A DNA stretch of 64,000 bases. It comes from Octopus bimaculoides (lineage: Eukaryota). The translations under genes and the position numbers were made by a program. Location: positions 37,888,293-37,952,292 of the forward strand of contig NC_068984.1 of assembly GCF_001194135.2 (NCBI RefSeq). Reading direction: 5' to 3'. Below the pieces are notes generated by a model that was not told where the DNA came from, made no database searches, and saw nothing but the letters and a program-made list of their open reading frames with translations. This document shows positions 1-63,617 of this stretch, in pieces; position 1 is the first letter of the stretch, and each line of letters starts with the position of its first letter.

Positions 1-160
1 AGGGGCACTGACAACGATCTCGCACGAAAGATATCATGTGTCACCCGCACATGAGCCAGTCCAGGGACACTGGCAAATGATCCCGCTCGAAACATTTCAT
101 GTGTCACCCGCACAAGAGCCAGTCCGGGGGCACTGGCAACGATCTCGCTCCAAATTTCTT
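1..160. repeat. GC-rich ~63-bp tandem repeat of the type found in the 3' UTR of local RTE-like LINEs (truncated by window edge)
   Basis: CATGTGTCACCCGCAC at 35 and 98 (period 63). Units with GAGCCAGT...GGCACTGGCAACGATC resemble the arrays at 19580-19850 and 58101-58345. Confidence 0.7.
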
Positions 161-856
161 CTATCATGGGTTGTTGCCATCAAGCCTCAGGGCAGCACTG
201 ATTCACCTGACCTTTGATCAAAGGCATTCCAGCTATGACCATCCCATCTTGATCTTCACACAGTGTATTGAGGACTATGTTATCCAAAATGTGTTCCTTC
301 TCTTTTAAGACAGTAGGGTGATTTGAAGGTAGAATTAACTGCTATTTCTTGCAGGTTGAATGATGGTATATTGTAGTTGTTATATTTTAATTATGCTTTA
401 CCTAACTAAAGTTTCCTTAGAATCCATCAGATTACAGAATGTGATACCCTATTAAAGACATTTCCTTGTAGACAAATGTGAAGTTTGTTCTAGGCTAAAA
501 GCTGTTTCATCACAAGAAATTCTGACTTCACATCCAAGAACAAACCCCAAATCTAGTCGATAAAAAGTTAACTCTAGCATATACTAACACTGTCATCACT
601 CACATACATTCAAGATATAGGAATTACTAAAAGCATATTCATGATGCACAAAGACTTTCAAATACAGGCTAGGTTCAGATTAATTTCTTCACTTGCAATA
701 AAATACCAGTCTGTCAAGGCACAAGAAACATTTCCAGTAACTATTTTTGCTATTGGAAACTGATAGTGATTTTCTTATTAATAAATGCATGTCATTTTTT
801 ATAAACCAATGAAAGTTTTGCTGTACATAGTGTCTTTTGGGTGTTCTAAGACTCAC

Positions 857-920
857 TATAAATACATCAGCAGCAAAAAAATCAATAATTGATTGTTGTA
901 GCATTTGTTGGCTAAACCAG
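857..920 (-). CDS. Candidate exon 4 of unidentified divergent gene (S-WFSQQMLQQSIIDFFAADVFI)
   Basis: T-rich tract plus ...CTTTGAAG acceptor before 920. Phase-2 entry matches the exit of the 1290-1434 exon. GTGAGT donor at 856, although the frame stays open to ~690, so the end is uncertain. Confidence 0.4.
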
Positions 921-1289
921 CTTCAAAGTCAACAACATAAGAAAAAAAAAACAAAGACTATGCCATTCTAGAAAAACATTACCAAATGTTTTTCTCCAAA
1001 ACTACAGACTGTGACAATTTGAGTTCTTGTAAGACAATGTAAAATTGGTATGTTAAGAACATCTATATAAAAGAAAATTCTCCAGAAATATGATACTATA
1101 AAATGTTCCTTTTTCTTTTAGGACTTGTACTATAATGTTCACTAGATTGAATATTTATATCATGCACAAATGGTTGACAAAATTTCGCCAGTTTTTTTTC
1201 CCCCTTAATCTTTTCCTTTTCATCTTGTATTCTTTACAAAACTCAGAAAAAATGTTTTCTGTTGTAAAAACCAACATTCACAATGATAC

Positions 1290-1434
1290 CTTAAGTTTCT
1301 TCTATAGGATCCATGTCCAAATTCCAGTTGAATATAATTGGACATTTGATAATAATGGTTCATTTGCTGTGCTTCAAAGAATTTGAAGTACTTTAAAATA
1401 TCGATGACAGCAGTCACTTTTAAAAGATGTGTTT
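1290..1434 (-). CDS. Candidate exon 3 of unidentified divergent gene (ETHLLKVTAVIDILKYFKFFEAQQMNHYYQMSNYIQLEFGHGSYRRNL)
   Basis: CTTTCTTGCTATTAG acceptor and AG|GTATCA donor. 145 nt, and the only open frame is the one predicted by phase-1 entry from the previous exon. Confidence 0.5.
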
Positions 1435-2371
1435 CTAATAGCAAGAAAGTGCTTTTATTTGTGTATAAAAAGCATTTATGTAATATTCAAGAAAAAAACA
1501 ATAACAACAAAACAGGTGACATGAAACATAAATTAAATGGAAGGCTGAATACATAAGTTTTATGGATGATAGAACTGAGGCTTGGTGTACTATTAGCATG
1601 CATGAAAGACAGAGTACAAGTGCACTGAGAGATGATGCATGCAGGAAAAAAAAGTCCACTGTGTAGAGAGGTGATGTTTAGGAGTGGTAACAGATGGAGC
1701 AATATGTGCCTTATGCTCTTGGTAGAGGGAAGAAACCCATGGAAAAGGGCGAACAAGTAAAATGTGGCAAAAATGAAGTCAGATATCAGGAAAGAGAGAT
1801 CAAATCCTGAGTGCATTAGAGTTGATAGACTATGTATCAGAGAGCCCTGTCAGTACACCACATCACAGTTTGACAGAAATGCTTTCAACTCAAGAAAACT
1901 TGGCAAGGAGACTGTTTTGTGCCAGACATGATCAATATTTTACTGATGTCAAGTGCAACAGCAATGCTTTTATAGTTTCTAAAATATGGGTATATGTAAA
2001 CTGTACTGAAGGCTGAGATGAGAAAAAATTAGGAGACTTGAGGTGACTTAACTATTGTTCTCATCAATTTTGAGATGTGGAAAGTGAGAGTGATAGGCTG
2101 ATATTTGATAGGGACAGAGTCTTCCTTGTTTGATGAAGGGATATCTTATAACAGGTTTCCAAAAATCAAGATAGATTCCTGGATAGAGTAGCTTTGAAGC
2201 AGGACTACGGAACCTTAGTGTTAAACATCTAATCATCTGGTTAGTAATGATTCTTAGTAATGTTTGGATTTAGGTTCAGAAATTTTTCCAAAACCTGCTC
2301 TTTTTAAAAATCCTATAGTCAACTTCATCCGAAAAAAATCAAATACTCAGCTCATTCATTCTCACAATTAC

Positions 2372-2500
2372 CTTCAACCCTGTAGCTTGGCATCTCAAAA
2401 CTTATTTTCAAGAAAATTCTTGTTTGAATTTGGCTAATATGCAGCAGAGAAATTGTCAAGATTCCATCGGAGGTGTGAAGGCAACAAGTGTCCTTTTTTT
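2372..2500 (-). CDS. Candidate exon 2 of unidentified divergent gene (EKKDTCCLHTSDGILTISLLHISQIQTRIFLKISFEMPSYRVE)
   Basis: CATAACTTTCAG acceptor and GAAG|GTAATT donor. 129 nt, open only in the frame set by exon 1 (phase 1). Confidence 0.6.
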
Positions 2501-3344
2501 CTGAAAGTTATGAGGAAACAAAGTCGATGGGGTGGGGCACAGTTGTATAGGTATGCTGCAATTGACACTGGTGCAATGAAAAGCCAAGATGACCTTTAAA
2601 CGATTTGAACTTTGCATAGTGATTTACCAAACTAGTAACAAATGGAGTATATAATTCGACATTCTGTTGTTATATAACTGTCCTTGATGTCTCTAAATAT
2701 ATTGCCTTTGACGAGGAACAATTGAAAATATTTGTAGATGAGGTATAATCAATTAAATATATTTTATCAGAACAACGAGGCAAAGTAAATGCAAGCAATA
2801 TTCAAATTCAGTATGTTGAGAGAATATTTAAAACTGAAAAAACATTTAAGTAGGAGCTAATTCGTTAGCTAAAACGTTACTAATTAAATGCTTTAACAAA
2901 CAACGAAGTTGTGGTATTCTAAATGTAAATAACATCGCATCGAGAAAAAAAGTTTATCAAAATAATGTCATTAAAGATTGTAAAGCCATACTTTAAAAAC
3001 CCAAAATGTCAGTAAAGCCATACTTTAAAAACCCAAAATTGGAATCAATTTATAAATCTTAAATATCATTTTGCCGAATATGAATACAGCATATCTATTA
3101 TAGAGTTACATAAAGTTGATGCGCCAAACTGAAGTTGTTTCAATAACATTTGCAATACAAACGCATTTTTTCAATGACGTTAGAGTACACAGATATTTAT
3201 ATTATGAAATAAGCTAAAAGCGCTCAGTAAAAAAAATTGCATTAACATAAGTGAGTGTATCTTTGGCAAGTTCAATGAATTATCAATGAAATAGAGAAAA
3301 ATCTGAGTAATAAAAGTGATGAATTAGTGCGAGGAGACACTCAC

Positions 3345-3360
3345 CTTTGATGGTCGCCAT
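3345..3360 (-). CDS. First coding exon of unidentified divergent gene (MATIK + G)
   Basis: Minus strand reads CAAG ATG GCG ACC ATC AAA G|GTGAGT: strong start context and consensus donor, in a locally GC/CpG-richer island. Confidence 0.65.
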
Positions 3361-3423
3361 CTTGCCCTTGCACTATCTCAAAGCGAGGCACTTCCGGTAA
3401 AAGAAAAAAGTATTGGGTCTAAA
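3361..3423. promoter_or_regulatory. Bidirectional promoter / short 5' UTRs between two head-to-head ATGs
   Basis: 63 bp between opposite-strand start codons. Contains CTTCCGG (ETS/GABP-type motif). Both ATGs sit in AA(A/G)ATGGCG (YY1/TISU-like) contexts. Confidence 0.7.
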
Positions 3424-3447
3424 ATGGCGGACGCGCAAGACTTGAAG
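3424..3447 (+). CDS. PIAS: PIAS / Su(var)2-10 SUMO E3 ligase, coding exon 1 (MADAQDLK)
   Basis: ATG GCG GAC GCG CAA GAC TTG AAG|GTTTGT. Splices in phase 0 to 40144 giving [20 protein letters not shown], matching vertebrate PIAS N-termini (MADxxELK/R-xMVxSxRVSELQ). Confidence 0.9.
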
Positions 3448-5042
3448 GTTTGTGATGATTTTTCTTTTACGCTTCTCTACATGTTTTCTTTCTGTTAACT
3501 TTGAATGAAAAGCATGTTTTCAATGTCGTTCCTTTACCTCGATCTCTTATCATTTTTGTTAGTTATCGTTTCTTAATAGCATTGGACCCACAAAGAAATG
3601 TGTATGTATTCATTAGTCGTGGTGGTAGTAGTAATAGCCAGTATTAAGTTAAGCTTTGAAAAAAAAATATAACAACAAAACAGCACTTTTTTAAAACTAA
3701 CAAACAAACGATCGAACAGGTTTTTATCATAGGACAGCTTAAGTACATTGTTCTTGATTTACTTTCACAATTACTGTTACTAAAAACAACTCCTGACTCT
3801 TCTGCTTTCATTGTTATTATTAATAATGGTACTAATAGTAGTAGTAGTAGTAATTTTAGTACTAGTACCACTAGCATAGGTAGATGGTGATACAGGCATA
3901 CATACATTGTAATGACATGGTTTAATATATATTTATACAATATGAATATAATTGTATATTTATACATGAATATAATGGTATAGAAACTGCTTGGTAGTTA
4001 TTACCACCACAACCCTTTACCCCATAAAGTTAATATGTTTGTCCTTACTCAAGCCTTTTTCTCTCCATTTACTGTTATACAATTTCTTCCACCAACGTGC
4101 ACACGGATCCTATTAACAATCTAACACTTACAAATTCTACCACTGAAAGTGCTATTTGAGTGTCTCTCTCCCATATATAATCAATCAATCTATCATGCAC
4201 ATAGTCATACATGCTATTCTACATGTGTATACTCTCCCCTCTAATTTAAGCTTCTCTTTATCATTTTAAAGATCTTCTTCCCTATCTATTGTCTGTATAT
4301 ATATGTTGGTTTTTGAGTAGGTTATCATTTATTTTATCTCTTGTTTTTAGTTTAATGTCTTAAAACTAAATAGAAATCAATGATCATACCCCCTCGTGGA
4401 TTACGTATGTCCTTTACTGTTCACTAGTTAATTATATAACCCACACACGCTTGCTTGTTAACGTGAGTGTGTGATCATGCCTAGTTAATATGTATGTCTG
4501 TAGTACACTAGTTTTTTTCTTCTTTTTATTTTTTACAAGAAGCGCCCGGTACATTGCTGTTCCGTCAGTCTGATTATATATAGTCCCGCTCTTTCATTCC
4601 TTTTCTCTCTCTATCGCTTCTCTTTGCTCCCAACCAAACCGCTTACTGCTTGACAGGTGGACTACTTGCTGGTTGAATTGATTGCTTGCTTGCCTGCTGT
4701 TTGAGCAAGCAATTCTAGGTTGCTAGCTTTGCAACAAGCTCTCTCGCTTGCTTGCTTGCCTGCTCTATAAGCTTTTCCAGCTAACTTAATTGTTGGCTGT
4801 CTTTTATAATTTCGCTACTCTACGGTTTTCTACTCTCCCTTTCCTCTATCTCATACTTTCTTCTTTCCATCCTGTACATTTTTTAATTATTGTCATCGCT
4901 TGGTTATAAACCACAGGAATACAATTATATTGCTATTATGAGCTAAATAAAAAAACGATACAATGTTTACTTATACATATCTTTTTTTTTTTTTTACTGA
5001 AGATGTATAAATATTGCATATACATTTTATNNNNNNNNNNAA

Positions 5043-5110: not shown

Positions 5111-6854
5111 AAGATATTTTGGTGTGGAGGGATTTAACAGCCACTCAAATGGTTTGTAGATAATGTTGACATAGATTCCCACTTTCATCTTATTATTACC
5201 TTGTCGATGTATTGATGATATAAATACGTTTCTTGCAATTTCGAATCATTAAAATCAAAATCAATTTGGCTGACCTTCCATTCGTTTTCTTCTATTTTCC
5301 AGTTGTCAGTGTTTTTATTTCTTTTATCTTGTTACTTTCGGTTTCTTAAAACCTTTGTGAAGTGAGAAAAATAGAACAAAATAGATCGAGTTCCAGTAAT
5401 TTTTGACATGGGTGATTGATCACTATATGTTATTCGCATTATAAAACAACACTCACTTTGTAGACATTATCCTTTTTTATTTTTATTCTAGTTAAAATAA
5501 TGCAGACTTTTTTCCTAAAGAATTAGCTAACTTTTCTTAATCTGATGAGACATCGATATATATTATAATTGTTGTTAACTGAACTTTGATTACTCTCTTC
5601 TTTTTTTTCGCCTCTGTGACGACAGCTAGTACTAAATGATCAATCAAGTGATCGTGATATGTTTGTTTGTCGATTAATAATATTTTCATTGAAGTTGCAC
5701 ACAGAGCAGGATATGAATCGCTTCATTAAATCATTGTCATCAATTATGACATTATCTATTAATGTTATGTACCTTGATACTTGTTGTTTATAGTGTTCCT
5801 TAAGTTTTTATTTAATTATTTAAGTAAATTAAGGAGGGTTTGATGCCGTTACAGTGCATCGCTTCTGCTCATTGTGCTTTACATTGGTCATGGATATTGT
5901 TTCGCGATTAGCTTTATAAAAGACAATCCTTTCACTTTGTCGCAGACATCAATATCAGTTAAGTGATTAAAAAACAAAAACAAATCAAAACAACTTTCAA
6001 GACTCTCTCTCCCTTATTCTTGGATGGGGCAGAGGAAGCTAGGATAGAATAAAATACTATTTTCTTAATGTGATTGGGTACTTAAATATTTGCATTGTTG
6101 TAGTGTTTTTGTAAAACAGAAACAAAAATATTAAAATAATAATGTCATTGTTTAAGATTTGACCTAATTTGTGTGAAGCAATTTTTATTAGTCTGGCTGC
6201 TGTCTTTCTCTTCACACACACATATAAACATGTGTAAATCTAAAATAGAACTGAACTTTAAAAAATATTAGTTATAGAAAGGTTGCTTGAATCTGTTTAA
6301 GAAAAAGATCTAGGTTGTAAATTGCTGAATCAGTGTTTTTCGACCTTCCCAAGAGACAAGCAATTAATTTAGATTGTATTCCAGTTTCTGAATTCATAAC
6401 TGGTCGAAGATGAGTTGATTGGTTGAGGAATAAGTATATTCCACTGTTGTGACAAATTCAGTTAGCAGGACTTATGATAGACTGTTGTTCTCTCCCTATG
6501 GATTGTTGATGTAATTAACCACTCTTAGGCTTTATCTCTAATTGTAAAATGCGCATTCTTTTCCACTGAGTTATGTAACTTATGTAGCCTTAATCTTTTC
6601 TTTCTGTCTAGAACACACCATCTAATGTGCCATTGCTAAAGAATGTTCATGATATTAAGCTTTCTTTTTGATTTTTGTTTTTAATCAGAATTTTTATTTT
6701 GTTAGCTCCAGCACAATTTTAGAAACTTTTTTCCTGCTTCTAAAGTTATCAGGCATTATATACCAAACATTAATTTTGAGGACAATTTTTTTTTTTTTAG
6801 ACATAAAATTGTTTCACTTAATGATTTTGCAAAGAAGGGGGCTTGGAAATACCA

Positions 6855-8790
6855 TTATGAGAGGCTGCTAAATGTGGAGAATAAATGGTAGGTGGAGAGT
6901 CTGCCAAACATTAACCCAACTGAGAGACCAGCTATCCGAATCGACAGTGGCTTGTTAGATAATGCAGTTAAGGATATGAAAATAGGGAAAGCCCCTGGCC
7001 CATCAGGAATCACCACTGAGATGCTTAAAATATCTGGCAGAGTAGGATATAGCCTAGTCACCCATATAGTTAATCAGATTGTCCATGAGGGAGTCATACC
7101 CAATGATTGTTGTTGCTGCATTTTTGTCAACTGCAAAGGTGATGCTTTAGACAGAAATAATTACAGAGGCATCAATTGCTGGACCAGGTGATGGAAGTCA
7201 CAGAAAAGGTGATCACTCAGTTAATCAGGAAGAGAGTTACTGTAGATAAGTTGCAGTGTCTGTGATGATTCCTCTCTTTATGGTTGAAGAATAATGATAA
7301 TCATAAGATTGGTCTTTCTGAGACAAAAAAAAAAGGCAGCGCGCTGGCAGAAACGTTAGNNNNNNNNNNTCTTTCTGAGACAAAAAAAAAAGGCAGCGCG
7401 CTGGCAGAAACGTTAGCACGCCGGGCGAAATGCTTATCGGTATTTTGTCTGCCGTTAGGTTCTGAGTTCAAATTCCACCGAGGTCGAATTTGCCTTTCAT
7501 CTTTTTGGGGTCGATAATTTAAGTACCAGTTACGCACTGGGATCGATGTAATTGACTTAATCCCTTTGTCTGTCCTTGTTTGTCCCCTCTGTGTTTAGTC
7601 CCTTGTGGGCAATAAAGAAATAAGATGAGTTGAAGTTCGGATTTGTGCCAGGCAGGAGCACGACTGATGCTATATTCCTGGTAAGGCAACTGCAGGAGAA
7701 ATATTAAGTCAAAAATAAACTCTGTACTTGGCTTTTGCTGACATGGAGAAAGCCTTTGACAAGGTCCCCTGATCCCTTATCTAGTAGTCAATGTGGTAGC
7801 TAGGGATAGATGAGTGGTTGGTGAGAGCAGTACAAGCCATGTACAGATAGGAGTCTACCAAGGCTCAGTTCTTAGCCATCTCCTGTTTATCTTAGTCCTC
7901 CAGGCCTTAATAGAGGAATTCAAGACTGGCATAGAGCTTCTCTATGCTGATGACCTTGTTTGTATATAGCTGAATCACTACCTAACCTAAAGAAATTTCA
8001 GGTGTTGAAACAAGGTCTGCAAATCTTAGAGCTTTAGGGTTAATTTAGCAAAAGCCATAATCCTAGTAAGTAGGAAAACTGACAAATCACAAGTCCCTTC
8101 TGGGAGATGGCCCTGCTTGATATGTAAGAAGGGTGTTGGTAGAAACTCCATACGTTATACTCAGTGCAAGCTTTGGATGCAAAAAGTGCAGCAGTATCAC
8201 AGGAAGGTTAATGGAGAATATAGTCTTTGTATGTGGTAAATGTACAGGTACAATAAGCACTAAAAATACACAGATAATACGCTACCTCAAATGCTCAGGT
8301 GGATCATAAGCAGTAGTAGATAACTTCTGTTACCTAGGGTATCGAGTTAGTGGGGGAGGGAATCCTGAAAGTGTAGTTACTAGGATAAGAATTGGCTGGG
8401 TGAAGTTCAGTGAAAGGCTGAGTGTGTTATATGGCAGTGAAACATGGGCTTTGACTACAGAGGACTTGCGAATGCTTCAAAGAAATGAAGTTAGCATGCT
8501 TTGCAGGATGGGTAATGTCAGTGAGCATGCACAACAGAGTGTAAATGATTTAAGAGGAAAACTGTGTATTAGAGGTATCAGATGTTGTGTGCAAGAGAGA
8601 AGACTGTGCTGTGTATGGGTGAGTACAGCTGCATAAAGAAGTGCTGAGCTCTAATTGTGGAGGGAACAAGTGGAAGGAGTAGACCCAGGAAGATGTGGGA
8701 TAAAGTGGTGAGAAAGGATCTTTGGATGCTGAGCTTCACTGTGGAAATGACAAGGGACTGGGAGATGTGGCGATTTGCTGTACTTGATAA
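6855..8790 (+). mobile_element. Decayed RTE-clade LINE, reverse transcriptase region
   Basis: Fragmented motifs KAPGPSGI, DALDRNNYRGI, FGFVPGRSTTDAIFLVRQLQEKY, DMEKAFD, LLYADDL, YGSETW, with stops and frameshifts. Interrupted by a SINE. Confidence 0.9.
7392..7622 (+). mobile_element. tRNA-derived SINE (octopus OK/Nin-domain type) nested in the RTE LINE
   Basis: A-box-like TGGCAGAAACG, B-box GTTCAAATTCC, central TTTGCCTTTCATC...GGGGTCGATAA..AAGTACCAG domain and AATAAAGAAATAA tail. Degenerate 13-bp TSD AGAT(A/G)AGTTG(C/A)AG at 7244-7256 and 7623-7635. The head is duplicated at 7335 across a 10-N gap (assembly overlap). Confidence 0.85.
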
Positions 8791-8972: not shown

Positions 8973-10677
8973 AATCAATGTCTTTATATGTCACATATTG
9001 GAATTTAATTTAATATTCTACCTTATTCCCTTAATTATGCTGCTTTCAAAAACAGTTTCATTTGTAGACAAACTTTCTAACATAAGCTATCTTATGCCTC
9101 ATTGTTATTGTTATTTGATCAAGAAACTTAAGCACATACAAATACAAAAGATAGCTATTACTTTTATTGTCTTAGATAGAGATACACAAATGACACACTG
9201 TCTTTGCACTTTATTTCTCACAAGATTTCCACATGATTGGAGCACATTACTCCAAAATTTTTATATGACTTTGTTGTTTTTCAACTTCTGAGATAAAATT
9301 ATTATTTGCATATTCTAATCATAAGAAAAATCTATAACTTCAATGTATTTATCTATAATCATTATGACCATTCTATAAAAAGGAGTCTTAAACTATGTTA
9401 AATTTAGATTTTGTTTAAATCAAATTGTTAATCTTCTTGAACATATATTTCAGGGTATCAATTTAGGATTTTGTTACTATTTTTGGTTTGAGGTTGTGAA
9501 AATATAGTACATCTACATAGCTAACAAATATAGAATTTATTTTACTAAGGTCACTTTTGCTTTTAGTATGGATATCTGATGAGAAATTATACATTTTTGA
9601 TAAGTACTATTAAATTTAAATATATATTATTAATTTTTCTTTTAAATTAGTCCAAGACAGAATAGACGACTAGGAATGATTAATGAATTTGAAATGTAAT
9701 TTGAATATGAAAAGCACATTTGATGTTGTTTACATTTCTTTGTATATTGGTTGCCATTCTTTAGATTTAAAAAAATTTTCATGTGTGTGGTTGGTTCTTC
9801 CAATGGATTCATTACTGTAGAACTCTTGCTAGTCTCACATTTGCTAAAACATTGAAAAAACTTAAGCAGGTTATAATGATGAAGTCAAGTGGAAGAGATG
9901 GGGTTAATCCTTCAGAAGTAAGCACTTTTATAGTTAACCAGGAAATGATTTGAACTCTTAACTGAAAGTTGTTAAGTAGCTTATGTGTAAGTTATAGATG
10001 TATGACTGAGATCTTATAGAACTTTTACAGCCTCTCACATTGATGGTAAATTTTTTACATTTTGCTTTTATTTCATTTCCTAAAAAAGCCACCTGTTTTA
10101 GTGACAAACACTGCTTAATTACCTTCTTCTGAAAAAACTTTTAGTATTATTTGAATGACCATATATTTTTATTGGTTGATCTACTGCAAAAAATCCAAGC
10201 TAATAGCATGTAATGGTAATCAATTTAGTTGATGATAGTATGGAAAAGATAGGTGAAACTAGTATAGATAGTAATTTGTTTGAAGTAAAGATGGCAGAGA
10301 TAGCCAAGACAGTAAAATACTTAGCCTGATTTTACTTTTTATATTTCCAGAGTTGATATTTTACCAGTCAATCAAATATGTTCTTCAGCTACAAACAAGT
10401 AGCTTTGTTAGGAAAATATGTATTCTGTTTCGATATTAGAATTCACATTTGTTTAAGTAAAAATAGTTACCACTCTTAATCACAAGTCAGTGGTTGACAG
10501 AATGAAGAATATCCAGTTTTGAAAATAATTTCTCTAACATGTAAATACTGAAATGTTTTAAAATTCAACCTATTCATGCTAGTATGGACAGATGGAAAGC
10601 TAGGCAGGAGTTTGAAGGATTTCATAAAAAAAAAAGAAAAATGAAAAAACATCTTGTGAAAATATTTATAACATTTG

Positions 10678-11409: not shown

Positions 11410-11954
11410 ATGTATGTATACACATACACACACACATATACATACAGCCACTCATAAAAAGCAAAATTATCAAAGTCATATATTAACTGTTTGTGGGATT
11501 TTCCAGTCATGGAAGCTTTGTGCAGTGCATGTGTATAAGCAAACCAGTTTGAAACACTGGGTTACATAAATCAGCCAATGAAATCTTTTCTCTGCATTAA
11601 CTTCAGTGCATGTGTGTGAATCAATCATTATATACTAACAGAAGATTATGTCTTCTATTAATTTGCCATAGTAAATATTTTGCCTGCAATTTCATCATAA
11701 GCTAAACACATCATTGCTAAATTTACCATCATGCTAAATACATCATCAGCAAATTCATCCTCATGCTTTTATCTGGTGGACAATTACATCATTAAACATT
11801 ATAGTTTTATTTGTAGGTTTGATATGTCATATTTAATTATATCATTGATGGTTAGAGTATGTAAATATGTCGTATTTAATTATATCATTGGTGGTTAGAG
11901 TATGTATATGGAATATATTTCACAAATGTATGTGTGCATTTTTCACTGAAAAAC

Positions 11955-12445
11955 NNNNNNNNNNNNNNNNNNNNNNNNNNNNNNNNNNNNNNNNNNNNNN
12001 NNNNNNNNNNNNNNNNNNNNNNNNNNNNNNNNNNNNNNNNNNNNNNNNNNNNNNNNNNNNNNNNNNNNNNNNNNNNNNNNNNNNNNNNNNNNNNNNNNNN
12101 NNNNNNNNNNNNNNNNNNNNNNNNNNNNNNNNNNNNNNNNNNNNNNNNNNNNNNNNNNNNNNNNNNNNNNNNNNNNNNNNNNNNNNNNNNNNNNNNNNNN
12201 NNNNNNNNNNNNNNNNNNNNNNNNNNNNNNNNNNNNNNNNNNNNNNNNNNNNNNNNNNNNNNNNNNNNNNNNNNNNNNNNNNNNNNNNNNNNNNNNNNNN
12301 NNNNNNNNNNNNNNNNNNNNNNNNNNNNNNNNNNNNNNNNNNNNNNNNNNNNNNNNNNNNNNNNNNNNNNNNNNNNNNNNNNNNNNNNNNNNNNNNNNNN
12401 NNNNNNNNNNNNNNNNNNNNNNNNNNNNNNNNNNNNNNNNNNNNN
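11955..12445. other. Assembly gap with duplicated flanks
   Basis: N-run. About 65 bp (GTGGTTAGAGTATGT...CACTGAAAAAC) occurs on both sides. Confidence 0.95.
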
Positions 12446-12584
12446 CTCTTCCGATCTGTGGTTAGAGTATGTATATGGAATATATTTCACAAATGTATGT
12501 GTGCATTTTTCACTGAAAAACTAAACATTGGTATGGTAATTATTTACATTTGACGAATATTTGTCCTCATCTTGTTTATTGTTG

Positions 12585-12630
12585 GCACAACATTTTGGCT
12601 GATATACTCTCCAGCCTTCATCAGGTCTCT
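12585..12630 (-). ncRNA. Degenerate minimal hammerhead ribozyme (Penelope pLTR)
   Basis: Minus strand: GAGAC-CTGATGA-A-GGCTG-GAGAGTATAT-CAGCC-AAAA-TGTTGTG. Core and stem II present, GAAA mutated to AAAA. Confidence 0.6.
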
Positions 12631-13122
12631 TGGGGAAATTTCGAACCTGAGTTCTCAATCCTAAGGTATTTTTCGATATTATTATTATTATTATTATTCA
12701 GGTCACTGCCTGAAATCGAACTCAGAATTTTGGTCATATTCTCTTCTGTTGGTGGTTTTACCCGAAGGAGATATTTGTGAAGTGTTGTATTACTCTTGAA
12801 TACTGTCCTGATGTCATATGGGCCACATATCTTTTGTATCTTTTCAGAGATGCCTTTCACATAGAGTAGACAGACTGTAAACAGTTTATTGGTTTCATCC
12901 TCTCTTTTCTTCATAATTGGAGTAGATAGCATGTTTTTGGGGTAGTTGTTGCTTAATAGATTGTGACTGAGCTTGATCATTTCTTCATGGTGGGTATCAC
13001 GATTGCTACTTATATTCTTTGCTCAATGTTTTAGGCACTGAGTTTGATTCCAGGCAGTGACTTGAATAATAATAACATCGAAAAATACCTTAGGAATGAG
13101 AACTCAGGTTCGAAATTTCCCC

Positions 13123-13150: not shown

Positions 13151-14389
13151 CAACAACAAACAAGATGAGGACAAATATCCATCAAATGTAAATAATGTAC
13201 ATAAATCCTCATCTCTTAAATATAGAACTGTATTGGTATGGTAAACCTATAAAAACAGCACTACTGTCAACATAGATCCCATTGACCTATTGTCCATTGA
13301 CCGTTGAGATTAAATTAAAAAATTATCAATAAGAATACCATGTATAGTGCACAAATTTTCATTTATTGTGGTAGCATTTATTAAACTATAATTTGTGCTT
13401 TTAAACAAAATTTTCTGTTAATTGTCCCTCTCTAACAATATTTAGTACACTACATTTACCCCAACTGTTTGCACATGTAATGAGCAGAGAAAGTGTAAGG
13501 TTGTCTGGTTTACTTTGTCTTATCTCACAGATGACTATTCAGCCTTTCTAGTATTGGTGCTATAAGAAAATGCACCTAGTACACATTATGAAGTGGTTGG
13601 CAACAGGAAAGGCATCCAACTGTAGAAATCAAACCACATACATGCACAAGTTTATGAGAGCAGTAGCTCTTAATAAATGTCTCCGATCATAATAACCCCC
13701 TCCAATTTATGTCAGCATGTAAAGCTGATATAAAATGACTATGACAGTGATCACTATTTTGTGTATGCCTTTGAGTGAATTTGGTTAACAAAAACTGTAG
13801 GAATTTGGCATGGATTAGTATGGCCATCATGGTTGGAGTCAGCATGTTTTCAGTTGTAATGTTCACTTAGAAGGGTTGTGGGGACTTCATCTTGTTCACA
13901 TCTTATTTTTTGTTTGGTTTCTGTGGCTGGATGCCCTTCTTAACATCACTCACTTTAAGGTACTGTTTTTCATAGCACCAGTATTGGAGAATGTTATGTT
14001 CTTGACAAGATTAAAGGGTCCTCACACCCTCACTCTTTATAGAGTGTACTGGGTGTATTTTTTTAACACAAACAGCAAGAGAAGTAGCCATTTCCTCATC
14101 ATGGCTAAAGAGACCTTACCACTTCATGTCTCTGCTTTCTCATCAGCCTCTTTACAAAGTGAGTAGTATGAGTGATAGCAACATGGATGAGAGTGATGAG
14201 AAAGATGCGTGATAGAGGGTGGATTGATAGGAGTACTCTGTATTCTGAGATAGTATTTATATTCAAGGCATTGTAACTGGGAAAGCTGAGAGATAACAGA
14301 AATCTATGTGATACAAGAGATGGAGAGATGACAGAGGCTCGGGATGTGTGAGAGAAAAGAAACAGGAGTAGACTCATTATTCCCATGTT

Positions 14390-14666
14390 GTTGTTTGTTC
14401 CTTCTTGAGCCATGCCCAACTCATAAGGGCCGGTTTCATTGGCATATAGGTTCTCCACTTCAACAGGACACCAGCTCAATGCAGGAGGAAAGAGTGAGAG
14501 AAAGTTGTGGCGAAAGAGCCAGCAGAAGTTTACCATTACCTTCTGCCAGAGCTGCGTGGAGTTGAGGTGTTTCATTCATAAACACATACATCACCTGGTC
14601 TGAGATTCAAACCCACAATCCCTCGATCACGAGTCTGCTACTCTAACCACTAGGCCATGTGCTTCC
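14390..14666 (-). mobile_element. tRNA-derived SINE (OR-type head), full length
   Basis: Minus-strand head TGGAAGCACATGGCCTAGTGGTTAG...GGGTTTGAATC (A/B boxes) and (CAA)n tail. 11-bp TSD ATTCCCATGTT at 14379-14389 and 14667-14677. Confidence 0.85.
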
Positions 14667-19430: not shown

Positions 19431-19960
19431 TTTAACGTCCGCTTACCATGTTAGCATGGGTTGGACGATTTGACTGAGGACTGGCGAACCAGATAGCTGC
19501 ACCAGGCTCCAATCTGATCTGGCAGAGTTTCTACAGCTGGATGCCCTTCCTAACGCCAACCACTCCGAGAGTGTAGTGGGTGCTTTTACGTGCCATCGGC
19601 ATGAGGGCCAGTCAGGTGGTACTGGCAACGGCCAGTATTTTACATGCCACCTGCACAGGAGCTTGTCCAACGGCACTGGCAATGACCTCGCTCAAATGTT
19701 TTCTAACGTACCACCAGCACAAGTGCCAGTAAGGCGACGCTGGTAACGATCACGCACAAATAGTGCTATTTACGTGCCACAGGCACGGAAGCCAGACGGC
19801 TGCTCTGGCAATAATCATGCTCGGACGGTGCTGTTAGTGCTTCACTGGCATAGATGCCAGTCATCGAATATGGTTCGATTTCGATTTCACTTGCCCCAAC
19901 AGGTCTTTGCAAGCAGAGTTTAGTGTCCAATGAAGGAGAGGTTGGCATGGGTGTCAGTTG
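19431..19960 (-). mobile_element. Ceph-tailed LINE-derived 3' end containing GC-rich tandem array
   Basis: Reverse complement of the Ceph tail (...CTACAGCTGGATGCCCTTCCTAACGCCAACC) followed by 4-5 diverged TTTACGTGCCAC...GGCACTGGCAACG units. Confidence 0.8.
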
Positions 19961-20726
19961 TCGAATTTGATTGTGGTCGTTTAACAGGTCGTCAGTTGTT
20001 CTAGTACTGAAGACTGACTTCCAATGCTGATCTTGTTGCTATTGTTTAGTTGTGGTAAGGGTAGTAGCAGTAAAACATAATGATGATGATAGGTCACTTG
20101 TGGTATTGCAAAGAAATGACAAAGTGGATAGCCAAACTCTGAAGGGCTCTTGATTGTAGAGTTGAATAGTTCATTGATTGTGCTAGTACCGAGGAGTGGC
20201 TTTGGCTCTTGTTTATATGTAAAATTTTAATGTTGAGGAAGTTTTAGTTCAGTAATATATCTTTCTAGCAATTTGTGGCAGGAGAAGGGGTTTTTTTTAA
20301 AATTTAGTTTTGTTCTTTGTTCTTATTTTGTGATGAAACCTAACTTCAAGCAACTTTTTATAGATCAATTTTTAAACACTATTTTCCAAGCCTGAGAAAG
20401 GTAAGTAGGGGTGCAATAGTGAATTTTGCACCCCAACAAAATTTTAGGGAGTGCAAGTGCACCCCCTGTTCCCAGGCCTTTTGATATCAATGTGTATGAA
20501 TAGTTCATACCTAGATTATGTAGTTATATATCTCACATAGATACCATATCTAATTGGAATCCATCTGTACTGAGCAGTGTTGCTGATTCACTCATGCTAA
20601 CTTACATGTCATTAACATTATAATTTTAATGTCCACTTTTCCATGTTCACTTGAATCAGATGAAATTTGTTGGAGCAGATCTCCTCTGGCCAGATGCACT
20701 CTTTCTGTGGCCAACTTTTAGCTGTT

Positions 20727-21387
20727 TCCTGGTATTTTTTGACATGGTCATAAAAACAACATCACATGACATAATTTTTGAATGTATAGAGCGGTGGCCC
20801 TCAAACTGTGTGCTGTAAGGAGTATTTCAGTATGAAGCAGGTTTCTCAAAAAATGCAAACATGTAGTTTTAGGTTCAGTCTCATTGCATGACACCTTGAG
20901 CAAATGTGTTCCATTATAGTTCAACAGTTCAATAGTTCAAATGTGTTCCACTATAGTGAACAGTACAACAGCTGGACATGGTTTCATGGAAGATTGCAAA
21001 CTAATACATGACAGTGACATTTGTTTACAACAAGTGTGCAATGTCAAGATAAGGACACACTCTTATATATACATGCATGTGCATACACACACATGCTCTC
21101 ATATATGCATGCATACATATATTCGCATACACATAATGGGCTTCTTTCAGTTTTCATCACCCAAAGCCACTCTCAGAATTCTGGTTGGCTTGGAACTATA
21201 GTGGAACACATTTGCTCAAAGTGTCATGCAATGAGACTGAACCTAAAACTACATGTTTGCATTTTTTGAGAAACCTGCTTCACACTGAATACTCCTTACA
21301 GCACACAGTTTGAGGGCCACTGCTCTATACTTTCAAAAATTCTGTCTTGTGATGTTGTTTTTATGACCATGTCAAAAAATACCAGGA
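20727..21387. repeat. Long inverted repeat, ~196-bp arms around a 270-bp spacer
   Basis: 20727-20922 is the reverse complement of 21193-21387 with few substitutions. Confidence 0.95.
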
Positions 21388-23399
21388 TTAATGCACAAGT
21401 ATACATGAACTCTAGATTTGATTAAAGGAAATGAAAATTCACTGCATGCAAAACAAATTTTGTGAAGCAACTCACTAACCGATCCACCTTAATATCAAGC
21501 AAAGCTAAGTGAGGTGAGGTGAATTGTTTTATCCTATTCAAGACTAAAAAAAAATTGAAGAACAAGAAGTCTGTTACTAGTTAATATTTACTCACAATGG
21601 ACCATGGCTTATTAAATTCACAATTACAGTAATGAAGATGAGAAATGAGAGATTTTGAAAGATGCCTTTGTGAAAGTAACATGGCTATAATAATTTCTTG
21701 GATGGAAATAAAGTTTTATAGGTAATAGTAGTAAGACCCAATCAAATAGACAATTTACTAGTAGAATAGGTCACAAGAACAGCAATATTCAATTACAATT
21801 GTAAAGTGTTAGACAAAAAAAAAAATTTCAGAATAAATGGATACCATTATATCGTTCAATTATTACCAGTGATAAAGAAAACAGTGAGACAAGGAAGTAT
21901 CACAGAGGCTTTATATATATATATATAAATAAAATGTTTTGTGGAAACACTAGAGGCAGGTGGGATGTTGGAGAGATGTGTCTGAAGATAGTGAATAAAA
22001 CAATTAAGAATACGGAAAGCAGAAGCTCCTTTAGAGTTAATGTTCCATTAGTCAGTCGCTTAGTTAATAAATTCACACTAAAGTTATTATCCATACTGAT
22101 TGGTATGTTACTGCCAATATGAACTGCTGCAAATGTAAAGATACACTTGAGAGAGGAAATGTCAAGGTTCTTAAAGATGGTAGAGAGTAGAAATTTTTAA
22201 TTAACTTTATGTTAAAAATTTTTTACTTGCATCTTATTTTGGAATCTACAAATGAACAAAGTCATAATGCTATCGGCAATATTGATGTATTTTCAGTTTA
22301 AAATATGATTTCAGTATTTTTAGATTTCTACATCTCATCATTATCATTTTGTCTGCTTTTCATGCTGGTATGGGTCAGATAGGCTGCCACAATCCAAGAC
22401 AGTTCTTTATCAGAGTTACCCCCAAGATTACATAGAGGATCACATATCACTTTTGTTTTAGTTTTGGCACAGTTTCTGTCTGGATGCTACTTGTCATTGA
22501 CCACTTTGTAGAGTACCGAGTGTATATTATTATGACCCCAGCACCAGTGAGATTACTTTATACCCAGTAACACTAAAGAGCCCTCTCTAATCTAAGATGT
22601 GTTCATTCATCCAAAGTATAAACCAGAATGGTGAACAGAGAAATTGATGACAGAAGAGCCAGGCTAGAGAGAATGAGTATATAATGGTAGAAACAGGGTG
22701 ATAGAGAGCAAGGGCAAATAATGTATAGTGATGGTGGTGGACAGTGATATGGTTGAGTGATGAGAGAGTGTATTGATTACAGACAGGCCCAATGCAATTC
22801 CTTACACGTAGGCCTTTTGATAAGATTAGTGGTGGTAAGGGTTACTGGATACAGATAGGTCCAATACCTATTAAGAAAATACGAGAGAGAGGGTGAGTGT
22901 CAGAAAGATGGATGGGTTTGACAGAACCAAAGCCATCCCTAATCACACAGGCAGTATGATACAATGAATAGGAGAGATCAGCTTTTCTGGGCTTCAGCAT
23001 AGTAAATAGCGAGAGAGAGAGAGAGAAAGAGAGCTGTGTGATAGGGAGACAAGAATGTATCTAGAGAGATAAGGCAGTAGATATAGACTTAGCTGGGACT
23101 ATTGGACTAGAGAAACAAATATACATGCCTCCAAGCTTCCACCATTACTGCTCGTTTTTAATACTTTTAATGTTCATTTCACCATGCCTGCATATTTGGG
23201 TAGGTTTTCTCAAATACTGCCACCAATCATATCTTTGTTATCTCCTTTGTGGGGCACAGGATCCAGAGATCATTCTTCAGCCCTTATCTTCCTTGGTTTC
23301 TCTCAACTTCAGTACCCAGCACTTCATTGTACAATTTTGATCTTTCATACAAATCACATGCTCAAACCAGCACAGTCTTCTCTTTTGTAAACTACATCT

Positions 23400-40143: not shown

Positions 40144-40304
40144 CACATGATTATGAGCTTCCGTGTGTCAGAACTTCAAGTCTTACTTGGTTTTGCTGGT
40201 AAAAGTAAAAGTGGTCGCAAACAAGAACTTCTACAAAGAGCTTTAGGTTTGGTATCCCGAGTCTGTTCAATACCTGTTCAAATAAAAATTCGTGAACTAT
40301 ACAG
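40144..40304 (+). CDS. PIAS: PIAS coding exon 2, SAP domain ([53 protein letters not shown])
   Basis: Closely matches the PIAS SAP signature [30 protein letters not shown]...[19 protein letters not shown] acceptor, AG|GTATGT donor, phase 0 to phase 2. Confidence 0.97.
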
Positions 40305-63510: not shown

Positions 63511-63617
63511 ACGCCGATTTCCTAGCAGAAATACTAGCCCAAACCAAAATGCCACGTCTCAACCCAGTTCTGACTCTGGTTCGTCATCAAGCAATTTTCA
63601 GGGGAAACAAAGTTCTT
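63511..63617 (+). CDS. PIAS: PIAS coding exon 3 (R-RRFPSRNTSPNQNATSQPSSDSGSSSSNFQGKQSS)
   Basis: TTACTTTCAG acceptor and T|GTAAGT donor. AG+A completes Arg so the splice gives ELYRRRFP, as in vertebrate PIAS1/3. Confidence 0.93.

What the first reader, a model, noticed from the sequence alone, without database searches (positions are those of the whole stretch)
3345..3447. Ultra-compact bidirectional promoter: 63 bp between ATGs with mirrored YY1/TISU-like starts
The two start codons face away from each other only 63 bp apart. Both sit in AA(G/A)ATGGCG, the YY1 motif and core of the mammalian TISU short-5'-UTR initiator, and a CTTCCGG ETS/GABP-type site lies between them. Both genes have tiny first coding exons (16 and 24 nt). 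The 5' UTRs must be very short or the transcripts must overlap at their 5' ends. This resembles a vertebrate housekeeping-promoter grammar in a mollusc (inference).
Basis: partly seen in the sequence, partly recalled or inferred. Interest (0 to 1): 0.7.

Follow-up and report, generated by a model that had tools for sequence, protein, structure and literature searches.

The report
Octopus PIAS–NDUFS7 shared 63-bp promoter
Two unrelated housekeeping genes of an octopus, a SUMO ligase (PIAS) and a mitochondrial complex I subunit (NDUFS7), start back to back only 63 bases apart, and this tiny shared promoter has been kept across molluscs for hundreds of millions of years; it is an unusually compact and old example of a known kind of promoter.

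Summary
ATG 3424 (+) starts a PIAS-type SUMO E3 ligase: the exon is 24 nt (MADAQDLK), and exon 2 (SAP domain) lies 36.7 kb downstream. The 63-bp spacer holds an exact GABP consensus, CCGGAAGTG, at its centre.

Annotated genomes show the same head-to-head pair, with 56–76 bp between the ATGs, in Octopus vulgaris, Argonauta, Patella, Haliotis and a chiton. The pair also exists with a wider spacer in a bivalve (4 kb) and an annelid (about 300 bp). It is absent in a nemertean and a spider.

In poly(A)+ RNA-seq assemblies of the cuttlefish Sepia esculenta, both spliced mRNAs sit on one contig. RNA therefore covers the whole spacer, so the 5' ends overlap or some transcripts cross it.

The spacer plus the two mini-exons is the only part of the first 12 kb that aligns between octopus and cuttlefish. 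It is also the least CpG-depleted kilobase of the window.

YY1, TISU and GABP function is inferred from sequence and conservation only. This is a new, extreme member of a known kind, the ETS/NRF-1/YY1 bidirectional housekeeping promoter.

The parts
3345..3360 (-). First coding exon of NDUFS7 (complex I 20-kDa/PSST subunit). ATGGCGACCATCAAAG = MATIK plus the first base of a Val codon. Splice donor GTGAGT begins at 3344.
   Evidence: Sequence. N-termini of orthologues: O. vulgaris MATVRV..., Argonauta MAAVKV..., Patella MATCRV.... The same 16-nt exon sits next to PIAS in L005, L006, L001 and L009. Spliced Sepia mRNA reads ATGGCGGTCTCTAGAG|TTCTT. No further NDUFS7 exon lies in 1-3344; in O. vulgaris exon 2 is 6.1 kb away.
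3353..3364 (-). YY1/TISU-like element around the NDUFS7 start codon: CAAGATGGCGAC, 11 of 12 matches to SAASATGGCGGC.
   Evidence: Sequence. TISU consensus and properties from PMC2518114. The context agggcaagATGGCG is identical in O. vulgaris and Sepia. Patella has tcaagATGGCG and the chiton caaagATGGCGGC.
3361..3423 (.). 63-bp spacer between the two start codons; the shared core promoter and/or the overlapping 5' UTRs.
   Evidence: Identical bases against the window in the aligned spacer: 60 in Argonauta, 58 in O. vulgaris, 51 in Sepia. Spacers of 56-76 bp in six further taxa. Fully covered by poly(A)+ RNA 31-mers in Sepia.
3389..3397 (-). Exact strict GABP/ETS consensus CCGGAAGTG. It lies 26 bp from the PIAS ATG and 28 bp from the NDUFS7 ATG, so it is central.
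   Evidence: Sequence; single occurrence of CCGGAAGT in the 64 kb. Invariant in O. vulgaris and Argonauta; CCGGAAGTT in Sepia. This 9-mer was sufficient to induce reverse-direction activity in 4 of 6 human promoters (PMC2077898).
3379..3389 (-). Conserved block GCCTCGYTYTG with no assigned factor.
   Evidence: TGCCTCGTTCTG in O. vulgaris and Sepia, AGCCTCGTTCTGG in the chiton Liolophura, AGCCTCGTTCC in Haliotis.
3399..3410 (-). Pyrimidine run CTTTTTTCTTTT on the NDUFS7-sense strand (purine run on the PIAS-sense strand). TOP/TCT-initiator-like; a candidate NDUFS7 start region (inference only).
   Evidence: Invariant in the three octopods; a T-rich tract at the same place in Sepia.
3420..3431 (+). 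YY1/TISU-like element around the PIAS start codon: TAAAATGGCGGA, 9 of 12 matches to the TISU consensus, with the core ATGGCGG intact.
   Evidence: AAATGGCGGA is invariant in all seven aligned molluscs. Ala codon 2 is GCG in 9 of 9 species, while the other Ala codons of the same mini-exon vary (GCG, GCA, GCC, GCT).
3424..3447 (+). First coding exon of the PIAS-type SUMO E3 ligase gene (MADAQDLK). Donor GT at 3448.
   Evidence: Sequence. Spliced Sepia mRNA encodes MADAQDLK|[12 protein letters not shown].... The annotated PIAS genes (SAP, PINIT, zf-MIZ) of O. vulgaris and Argonauta end at exactly this ATG. Patella has MAEAAELK.
40144..40304 (+). PIAS exon 2 (SAP domain), after the acceptor ttcctttag. 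Intron 1 is about 36.7 kb.
   Evidence: Sequence. 100% identity to Sepia PIAS residues 9-62. Pfam SAP on homologues.
63511..63617 (+). PIAS exon 3 (RRFPSRNTSPNQ...); boundaries approximate.
   Evidence: tblastn with Sepia PIAS, 83% identity. Acceptor tttcag and donor gtaagt are present.
2751..3750 (.). CpG-undepleted island around the promoter: CpG observed/expected 1.05 at only 31% G+C.
   Evidence: Highest of 249 one-kb windows. Median 0.19, whole window 0.26. The core 3330-3460 has 47% G+C and o/e 0.96.

Best explanation
Positions 3345-3447 are the common 5' end of two divergently transcribed housekeeping genes of an Octopus species. PIAS (SUMO E3 ligase) is on the + strand and NDUFS7 (mitochondrial complex I subunit) is on the − strand. 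The 63-bp spacer is one shared, TATA-less bidirectional core promoter that sits in a CpG-undepleted island.

Proposed mechanism:
- A single central ETS site of the GABP (NRF-2) type nucleates initiation in both directions.
- Each start codon lies inside a YY1/TISU-like element oriented with its own gene.
- That element may act both as a downstream promoter element and as a strong start context for a short leader.
- Because there is so little room, the two mRNAs begin within or across the spacer, and at least some of them overlap at their 5' ends.
- The pair is held together because any breakpoint or insertion in about 60 bp would damage both promoters.

Shown here: the gene identities, the exon structure, the motif content, the conservation, the CpG state, and (in the cuttlefish) RNA coverage of the whole spacer.

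Inferred: which factors bind, where the start sites are, TISU-type translation, and co-regulation.
For: Gene identity and exons:
- PIAS exons 1, 2 and 3 are in the window.
- The NDUFS7 N-terminus matches cephalopod and gastropod orthologues.

Same head-to-head pair in annotated genomes, with the number of bp between the ATGs:
- O. vulgaris 65
- Argonauta 64
- Patella 56
- Liolophura 59
- Haliotis 76

The pair also exists with a wider spacer: Solemya 4021 bp and Capitella about 298 bp.

RNA evidence:
- Ten Logan contigs join the spliced NDUFS7 mRNA to PIAS sequence across a 71-bp spacer. Eight join it to spliced PIAS mRNA and two to unspliced PIAS intron 1.
- Two of the runs are documented poly(A)+ RNA-seq of Sepia esculenta.
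- Logan assembles 31-mers that were seen at least twice.

Conservation:
- Only window 3355-3463 aligns to Sepia within the first 12 kb.
- The spacer is nearly invariant among octopods.

Motifs:
- Exact CCGGAAGTG.
- TISU match of 11/12 for NDUFS7 and 9/12 for PIAS.
- The wobble base of PIAS Ala2 is invariant in 9 species, while other Ala codons in the exon vary.
- TISU genes are enriched for mitochondrial functions.

CpG: observed/expected is 1.05 at the promoter against a median of 0.19.
Against: - No start-site, chromatin or binding data exist for this species in the tools.
- AARATGGC is also what an ordinary invertebrate Kozak context plus a Met-Ala N-terminus gives.
- NDUFS7 codon 2 is GCT in Argonauta and Solemya and ACG in Capitella. 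The YY1-like site at NDUFS7 is therefore dispensable in some lineages.
- The ETS site is found only in cephalopods. The other molluscs and the annelid have an NRF-1-like GCGCATG at the same place, so the central element is not the conserved part.
- The Sepia contigs require an overlap of at least 30 nt. At least one leader must then exceed about 50 nt in some transcripts, which is longer than the +5 to +30 TISU rule.
- The libraries are unstranded, so the direction of the RNA over the spacer is unknown.
Confidence: 0.7

Rival explanations
1. The bidirectional promoter is real, but the 'YY1/TISU' part is coincidence. ATGGCG is simply Met-Ala with +4 G in the A-rich Kozak context usual for invertebrates. 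The ETS site (or the NRF-1-like site in other lineages) does the work, and translation starts by ordinary scanning.
For: - Many lophotrochozoan NDUFS7 proteins begin with MA.
- NDUFS7 uses GCT or ACG at codon 2 in three lineages.
- PIAS matches TISU at only 9 of 12 positions.
Against: - The wobble base of PIAS Ala2 is G in 9 of 9 species across two phyla. In the same 24-nt exon the other Ala codons and the Asp codons change synonymously.
- GCG carries a CpG, and the genome has CpG o/e of 0.26.
- The non-coding CAAG before the NDUFS7 ATG is kept from octopus to Patella.
Confidence: 0.35
2. There are two interleaved promoters rather than one shared promoter. Each gene starts beyond the other gene's start codon, inside the partner's first exon or intron. 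The 63 bp would then be mostly transcribed leader for both genes, with a long sense-antisense overlap.
For: - The Sepia contigs need an overlap of at least 30 nt.
- Contigs L019 and L020 join spliced NDUFS7 mRNA to more than 1.1 kb of unspliced PIAS intron 1.
- Conservation extends about 16 nt into PIAS intron 1.
Against: - L019 and L020 are equally explained by PIAS pre-mRNA reads.
- Beyond 3463 nothing aligns between octopus and Sepia, so no conserved upstream promoter is visible there.
- The CpG-undepleted region and the motif cluster are centred on the spacer.
Confidence: 0.2
3. The mini-exons are internal. The true first exons are non-coding and lie far upstream, so the spacer is not a promoter.
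For: None found.
Against: - For either gene, an upstream exon would have to lie inside the partner gene.
- The Sepia mRNA contigs are collinear with the octopus genomic sequence upstream of both ATGs, with no splice junction.
- The spacer carries no AG-acceptor-plus-polypyrimidine pattern directly before either ATG.
- CpG state and conservation both mark a promoter.
Confidence: 0.04

Closest known systems
Mammalian GABP-bound bidirectional promoters (Collins et al. 2007, PMC2077898; head-to-head genes with start sites less than 1 kb apart)
   Same: - Head-to-head housekeeping genes.
- No TATA box.
- CpG content above the genome background.
- An exact strict GABP consensus CCGGAAGTG between the genes.
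- YY1-type motifs, and NRF-1-like motifs in relatives, accompany it.
   Different: - The spacer is 63 bp between start codons, not between start sites, which is far more compact than the usual few hundred bp.
- There is a single ETS site.
- G+C is only 47% in the core and 31% over the island, so it is not a classical CpG island.
- Binding and bidirectional activity are untested in any mollusc.
[quoted passage not shown]
   Same: - The SAASATGGCGGC-like sequence contains the start codon (NDUFS7 11/12, PIAS 9/12).
- It fits a YY1 site in the sense orientation.
- NDUFS7 belongs to the mitochondrial class in which TISU is enriched.
- The room available forces short leaders unless the transcripts overlap.
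   Different: - The defining position (+5 to +30 from the start site; median leader 12 nt) is unknown here.
- Cuttlefish RNA implies some leaders longer than about 50 nt.
- TISU was described from human promoters, and its activity outside vertebrates was not tested here.
HSPD1-HSPE1 and other ancient conserved head-to-head pairs (Irimia et al. 2012, PMC3514665)
   Same: - A 5'-5' orientation kept over very long times.
- A very short intergenic distance.
- One partner is a nuclear gene for a mitochondrial protein.
   Different: - The partners are functionally unrelated (SUMO ligase and complex I subunit).
- The pair was seen here only in molluscs and one annelid. It was absent in a nemertean and a spider.
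- The pair is not mentioned in that paper's main text, and no paper on it appeared among the 12 listed by the search.
Mammalian OXPHOS gene promoters driven by NRF-1, NRF-2/GABP and YY1 (established knowledge, not checked in a paper here)
   Same: A complex I subunit gene carries a GABP-type site in cephalopods, an NRF-1-like GCGCATG in the other molluscs and the annelid, and a YY1-like site at its start.
   Different: The element is shared with a non-mitochondrial gene. The central site appears to have turned over between lineages, NRF-1-like in most and ETS in cephalopods.

Membership tests
Bidirectional promoter | Two protein-coding genes lie head to head on opposite strands. | tested here: met
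   PIAS on + and NDUFS7 on −. Confirmed by annotated orthologues and spliced mRNAs.
Bidirectional promoter | Transcription start sites are less than 1 kb apart. | tested here: inconclusive
   The start codons are 63 bp apart, and Sepia mRNA is collinear with the genome across the spacer. The start sites themselves were not mapped. L019 and L020 leave room for starts more than 1 kb away.
Bidirectional promoter | The shared sequence drives transcription in both directions, and the partners are co-expressed. | not testable with these tools
   Needs reporter assays and expression data. The only relevant observation is that both mRNAs are present in the same Sepia libraries.
GABP/ETS-dependent promoter | A strict consensus CCGGAAGTG lies in the core promoter. 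| tested here: met
   Minus strand 3397→3389. Invariant in octopods, 8 of 9 positions in Sepia.
GABP/ETS-dependent promoter | The site is occupied by GABP and is required for activity. | not testable with these tools
   No ChIP or mutagenesis is available.
TISU element | Sequence SAASATGGCGGC. | tested here: met
   NDUFS7 has CAAGATGGCGAC, 11 of 12. PIAS has TAAAATGGCGGA, 9 of 12, with the core ATGGCGG intact. This is met for NDUFS7 and only partly for PIAS.
TISU element | The ATG of the element is the start codon of the main ORF. | tested here: met
   Both ATGs begin the orthologous proteins.
TISU element | The element lies +5 to +30 from the start site, giving a very short leader (median 12 nt). 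| tested here: inconclusive
   The spacer length allows it. However, the joined Sepia contigs require that some transcripts have summed leaders of at least about 101 nt over a 71-bp spacer.
TISU element | Initiation is cap-proximal and scanning-free, and transcription depends on YY1. | not testable with these tools
   Needs translation and binding assays.
Classical CpG island | At least 200 bp with G+C of at least 50% and CpG o/e of at least 0.6. | tested here: not met
   CpG o/e is 1.05 over 1 kb, so that criterion is met. G+C is 31% over 1 kb and 47% over 131 bp, so that criterion is not met. It works like an unmethylated island in a CpG-poor, AT-rich genome but does not meet the vertebrate definition.
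PIAS family (Siz/PIAS SUMO E3 ligases) | SAP, PINIT and SP-RING (zf-MIZ) domains. | tested here: met
   The SAP exon is in the window. The orthologous full genes carry SAP, PINIT and zf-MIZ. The PINIT and MIZ exons lie outside the window.
NDUFS7 / NuoB (Oxidored_q6) | The conserved Fe-S subunit domain PF01058. | tested here: inconclusive
   Only the 16-nt first exon is in the window. The assignment rests on N-terminal similarity, identical exon structure and conserved position next to PIAS in six annotated genomes whose neighbour carries PF01058.

The most novel reading that the evidence does not exclude
A TISU-type dual element, acting as a YY1 site in DNA and as a strong cap-proximal start context in RNA, operates on both genes of a 5'-overlapping sense-antisense pair in molluscs.

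If so, two things follow. The NRF-1/GABP/YY1 grammar of OXPHOS and housekeeping promoters would date to the bilaterian ancestor, and TISU at least to the ancestor shared by molluscs and vertebrates. And the central activator site would have been swapped from NRF-1-like to ETS in the cephalopod stem, while the roughly 60-bp architecture stayed fixed for more than 500 million years.
Probability: 0.25. Interest if true: 0.65.

Novelty: new member of a known kind. Interest (0 to 1): 0.5.

Why it matters
Cephalopod genomes are large. Here the first introns are 36.7 kb and more than 3.3 kb. Yet these two genes keep their start codons about 60 bp apart in every molluscan class sampled with a compact spacer.

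That makes the locus a clean natural experiment in three respects:
- How little DNA a two-way promoter needs.
- Why some gene neighbourhoods resist rearrangement.
- Whether the YY1/TISU, GABP and NRF-1 logic worked out in mammalian cells is ancestral to bilaterians.

It also gives annotators a practical warning. The 16-nt and 24-nt first coding exons are easily missed. The Capitella model lacks the PIAS one, and the Solemya PIAS mini-exon uses a GC donor.

It does not reveal a new kind of mechanism.

Tried and rejected
- I looked for NDUFS7 exon 2 in window 1-3344 with tblastn (human, Patella-derived and O. vulgaris queries). Nothing was found. In O. vulgaris that exon is 6.1 kb from exon 1, so it lies outside the window.
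- The first homologue search with the PIAS N-terminus returned only short ORF fragments and no full cephalopod PIAS. It still gave the Patella entry that revealed the neighbour.
- The third homologue search was aimed at transcripts of the window's own species (MATIKV...). It found none and did not even list O. vulgaris. Direct 5'-end evidence for this species could therefore not be obtained.
- Lineus NDUFS7 (P0071) was not on record.
- A literature search for the NDUFS7-PIAS pair and for cephalopod start-site mapping found nothing relevant.
- Pfam scans of five long open stretches in PIAS intron 1 and beyond, suspected to be retroelement remnants, gave no hit at E ≤ 0.01.
- A CCAAT box (GACCCAATAC) in the octopus spacer was considered and dropped, because Sepia has CCAAG there.
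- I found no match to the Staf/ZNF143 site for the conserved GCCTCGTTCTG block. That comparison was from memory only.
- The idea that the joined Sepia contigs are an assembly artefact was rejected. The junction reproduces the genomic order seen in three cephalopod genomes and recurs in at least ten runs.
Full report
**1. What is in the sequence**

The window is AT-rich (34% G+C) and strongly CpG-depleted (observed/expected 0.26). It contains assembly gaps, so it is a eukaryotic genome assembly.

At the stated place the + strand reads ctaaaATGGCGGACGCGCAAGACTTGAAG|gtttgt (ATG 3424-3426, 24 coding nt). The − strand reads ggcaagATGGCGACCATCAAAG|gtgagt (ATG 3360→3358, 16 coding nt). Exactly 63 bp (3361-3423) lie between the start codons.

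CACTTCCGG sits at 3389-3397. On the − strand this is CCGGAAGTG.

AANATGGCG occurs nowhere else in the 64 kb on either strand (0.39 expected). CCGGAAGT occurs only here (0.18 expected).

**2. The plus-strand gene is PIAS**

- An exon at 40144-40304, behind the acceptor ttcctttag, encodes [30 protein letters not shown]...
- Joined to exon 1, the protein begins MADAQDLKHMIMSF... This has the same layout as the Patella protein, MAEAAELKHMIMSF.
- A third exon lies at about 63511-63617.
- Intron 1 is therefore about 36.7 kb and intron 2 about 23 kb.

**3. The minus-strand gene is NDUFS7**

Looking up the Patella PIAS fragment showed a head-to-head neighbour with Pfam Oxidored_q6, only 56 bp away. 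tblastn identified it as NDUFS7, the 20-kDa/PSST subunit of complex I, with 91-95% identity to human in the core exons.

N-termini of NDUFS7 proteins:

| Species | N-terminus |
|---|---|
| Octopus vulgaris | MATVRVLKLGG... |
| Argonauta hians | MAAVKVLQLGG... |
| Patella | MATCRVLGLRG... |

The window's exon gives MATIK plus the G of a Val codon. That is the same 16-nt, phase-1 first exon as in Patella (ATGGCGACTTGCAGAG|gt) and Haliotis.

No other NDUFS7 exon lies in 1-3344. In O. vulgaris exon 2 is 6.1 kb from exon 1, and the window maps about 0.9 kb short of it.

The window is 83-92% identical to O. vulgaris in introns. It therefore comes from another Octopus species.

**4. The arrangement is old**

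| Taxon | Upstream neighbour of NDUFS7 | bp between the ATGs |
|---|---|---|
| Window (Octopus sp.) | PIAS | 63 |
| O. vulgaris | PIAS (SAP, PINIT, zf-MIZ) | 65 |
| Argonauta | PIAS | 64 |
| Sepia esculenta (RNA contigs) | PIAS | 71 |
| Patella (gastropod) | PIAS fragment (SAP only) | 56 |
| Liolophura (chiton) | PIAS | 59 |
| Haliotis (gastropod) | PIAS | 76 |
| Solemya (protobranch bivalve) | PIAS | 4021 |
| Capitella (annelid) | PIAS | about 298 |
| Tubulanus (nemertean) | Tmemb_185A gene | not a pair |
| Parasteatoda (spider) | histone deacetylase gene | not a pair |

Two details on the wider spacers:
- In Solemya the PIAS mini-exon is MADAAGLK, with a GC donor.
- In Capitella the published PIAS model starts at exon 2. 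An unannotated candidate mini-exon, ATGGCGGACTACGCGGAGCTCCAG|gta, lies about 298 bp from the NDUFS7 ATG.

The ultra-compact state is thus shared by cephalopods, gastropods and chitons. The pair itself is shared by molluscs and at least one annelid.

**5. Transcript evidence**

It could be addressed in a relative.

An NDUFS7 protein of decapodiform type (P0046) is encoded on Logan assemblies of many sequencing runs. Ten places were shown.
- Eight carry, on one contig, the intron-free NDUFS7 ORF on one strand and an intron-free PIAS ORF on the other, with 71 bp between the ATGs. In L013 the PIAS ORF is complete (597 aa, beginning MADAQDLKHMIMSF...).
- Two further contigs (L019, L020) join spliced NDUFS7 mRNA to more than 1.1 kb of unspliced PIAS intron 1.

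Two of the runs, SRR20545807 and SRR19578103, are poly(A)-selected, non-directional RNA-seq of juvenile golden cuttlefish, Sepia esculenta (PMC9538352).

Logan builds contigs from 31-mers seen at least twice (PMC12424806). Every 31-mer across the spacer is therefore present in poly(A)+ RNA. Either the two sets of transcripts overlap by at least 30 nt, or some transcripts of one gene run right through the spacer. By my arithmetic the summed leaders are then at least about 101 nt over a 71-bp spacer, so at least one leader exceeds about 50 nt in some molecules.

This does not identify the main start sites, and the libraries are unstranded. It does show two things. The sequence upstream of both ATGs in mature RNA is collinear with the genome, so there is no spliced non-coding leader. 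And non-overlapping short leaders alone cannot account for these contigs.

**6. Conservation and chromatin proxy**

Within the first 12 kb of the window, the only segment that aligns to the Sepia sequence is 3355-3463. That is the two mini-exons, the spacer and 16 nt of PIAS intron 1, at 81% identity.

Against the window's 63-bp spacer, 58 aligned bases are identical in O. vulgaris and 60 in Argonauta, while the flanking introns diverge.

Conserved blocks, read in the NDUFS7 sense:
- CCGCCATTTTAGAYCCAA
- a T-rich run
- TTACCGGAAGT(T)GCCTCGYTYTG
- TGCAAGGGCAAGATGGCG

GCCTCGTTCTG recurs in the chiton and Haliotis. TCCGCCATTT is invariant in all seven molluscs.

The kilobase 2751-3750 has the highest CpG observed/expected of all 249 one-kb windows: 1.05 against a median of 0.19. 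That is the signature of a region kept unmethylated in the germ line. Its G+C (31%; 47% in the 131-bp core) is too low for the vertebrate definition of a CpG island.

**7. The motifs**

*ETS site.* CCGGAAGTG is the strict GABP consensus. Inserted as a single copy, it raised reverse-direction activity in four of six human unidirectional promoters, and GABP binds more than 80% of human divergent promoters (PMC2077898). Here it lies 26 bp from the PIAS ATG and 28 bp from the NDUFS7 ATG.

It is present only in cephalopods. At the equivalent place, about 15-30 bp before the PIAS ATG, the other taxa carry an NRF-1-like half or full site: GCGCATG in Patella and Haliotis, GCATGCGC in Solemya, GCGCATGTGC in Capitella, and GCGCACG in the chiton. 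This suggests turnover of the central activator site within a fixed architecture (inference).

*TISU.* It is defined as SAASATGGCGGC, located +5 to +30 from the start site. It fits a YY1 site and usually contains the start codon of an mRNA with a median 12-nt leader. It is enriched in mitochondrial and other basic-function genes (PMC2518114).

| Start | Sequence | Matches to TISU |
|---|---|---|
| NDUFS7, window | CAAGATGGCGAC | 11/12 |
| NDUFS7, Sepia | CAAGATGGCGGT | 11/12 |
| NDUFS7, chiton | AAAGATGGCGGC | 11/12 |
| PIAS, window | TAAAATGGCGGA | 9/12 |

Part of this is expected from Met-Ala in an A-rich Kozak context. One observation argues for constraint at the nucleotide level. PIAS codon 2 is GCG in all nine species from two phyla. 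In the same 24-nt exon the other Ala codons appear as GCG, GCA, GCC or GCT, and the Asp codons switch between GAC and GAT. This occurs in a genome that otherwise loses CpG.

NDUFS7 codon 2 is GCG in six of nine species. The exceptions include both wide-spacer taxa, Solemya and Capitella, and one compact-spacer taxon, Argonauta.

**8. Most likely mechanism**

A single TATA-less, unmethylated core promoter is nucleated by a central GABP-type ETS site. It fires in both directions. Each gene has a sense-oriented YY1/TISU-like element around its ATG.

Start sites lie within or across the spacer and give short, partly overlapping leaders.

A speculative placement would fit the required overlap of at least 30 nt. 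NDUFS7 would start in the TOP-like run CTTTTTTCTTTT (3410→3399), and PIAS would start near the GCCTCG block. That would give leaders of about 45-50 nt that cross over the ETS site.

The pair persists because about 60 bp leaves no neutral place for a breakpoint.

I give 0.7 to the overall statement. For its parts: about 0.9 for 'real gene pair with a shared compact promoter region', about 0.65 for a functional ETS site, and about 0.4-0.5 for YY1/TISU function.

**9. Comparison with what is known, and novelty**

Bidirectional promoters with GABP, NRF-1 and YY1 motifs are well described in mammals. NRF-1 and YY1/Kozak-like promoter motifs are described even in a sponge (PMC4773876). Ancient head-to-head pairs such as HSPD1-HSPE1 are known (PMC3514665).

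No paper on an NDUFS7-PIAS pair appeared among those listed by the search. The Irimia et al. main text does not mention it.

This is therefore a new and unusually extreme member of a known kind, not a new kind. Its interest lies in four points:
- The contrast between a 63-bp intergenic space and introns of tens of kilobases.
- Its depth of conservation.
- The apparent swap of the central factor site.
- It offers a concrete test of TISU outside vertebrates.

Noticed in passing
L009 (Haliotis asinina) 19509-25392: A Ribosomal_S19 (eukaryotic RPS15) gene lies just downstream of NDUFS7. From memory, RPS15 and NDUFS7 are also close neighbours on human 19p13.3, where PIAS4 also lies a few Mb away. 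This may be a remnant of an older linkage group.
   Followed up: no
L010 (Capitella teleta) 9679-9702, minus strand: An unannotated candidate first coding exon of PIAS (ATGGCGGACTACGCGGAGCTCCAG|gta, MADYAELQ) lies 298 bp from the NDUFS7 ATG. The deposited model begins at exon 2 (…[14 protein letters not shown]). An NRF-1-like TGCGCATGTGCA lies just upstream of the candidate exon.
   Followed up: partly
L008 (Solemya velum) 5956-5979, minus strand: The PIAS mini-exon MADAAGLK is followed by GCAAGT, an apparent GC-AG intron. Here the spacer to NDUFS7 has grown to 4 kb, and NDUFS7 codon 2 is GCT rather than GCG.
   Followed up: partly
L010 (Capitella) about 55 bp upstream of the NDUFS7 ATG, plus strand: A YY1/TISU-like CACAAGATGGCTGAAATGTAA forms a four-codon upstream ORF in the NDUFS7 sense. 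It may be a relic or a displaced copy of the element that sits on the start codon in molluscs.
   Followed up: no
L019 1-1110 and L020 1-1241 (Sepia esculenta-type RNA contigs): Spliced NDUFS7 mRNA is contiguous with more than 1.1 kb of unspliced PIAS intron 1. This is either PIAS pre-mRNA reads or NDUFS7 transcripts that start far upstream, antisense to PIAS.
   Followed up: partly
window 3379-3389 and L007, L009, L005, L013: The block GCCTCGTTCTG(G), 25-30 bp upstream of the NDUFS7 ATG, is shared by chiton, abalone, octopus and cuttlefish. I could not assign a factor to it.
   Followed up: partly
window 2980-3007 and 3012-3039: There are two direct copies of GTAAAGCCATACTTTAAAAACCCAAAAT, 32 bp apart, in NDUFS7 intron 1, inside the CpG-undepleted zone.
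   Followed up: no
window, whole; for example 34251-35750 and 43001-44000: CpG observed/expected is 0.26 overall, with a median of 0.19 per kb. This implies heavy germ-line methylation. A few other kilobases reach 0.69-0.76 and were not examined.
   Followed up: no
window 6892-8650, 55629-56012, 58568-59067 and assembly gaps near 5000, 7350, 11950-12460, 50970-51545, 55700-55870, 62100-62480: PIAS introns hold long open stretches that look like retroelement remnants, repeated copies of which hit many places in the O. vulgaris locus. The five stretches tested in Pfam (6892-7188, 8310-8633, 12624-13022, 14108-14575, 58568-58846) gave no hit at E ≤ 0.01. Several N gaps interrupt the region.
   Followed up: partly
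(tool behaviour): The word-indexed homologue search returned no full-length cephalopod PIAS. With a 123-aa query differing from O. vulgaris NDUFS7 at two residues, it did not list that protein. Absence from such a list is not evidence of absence.
   Followed up: no
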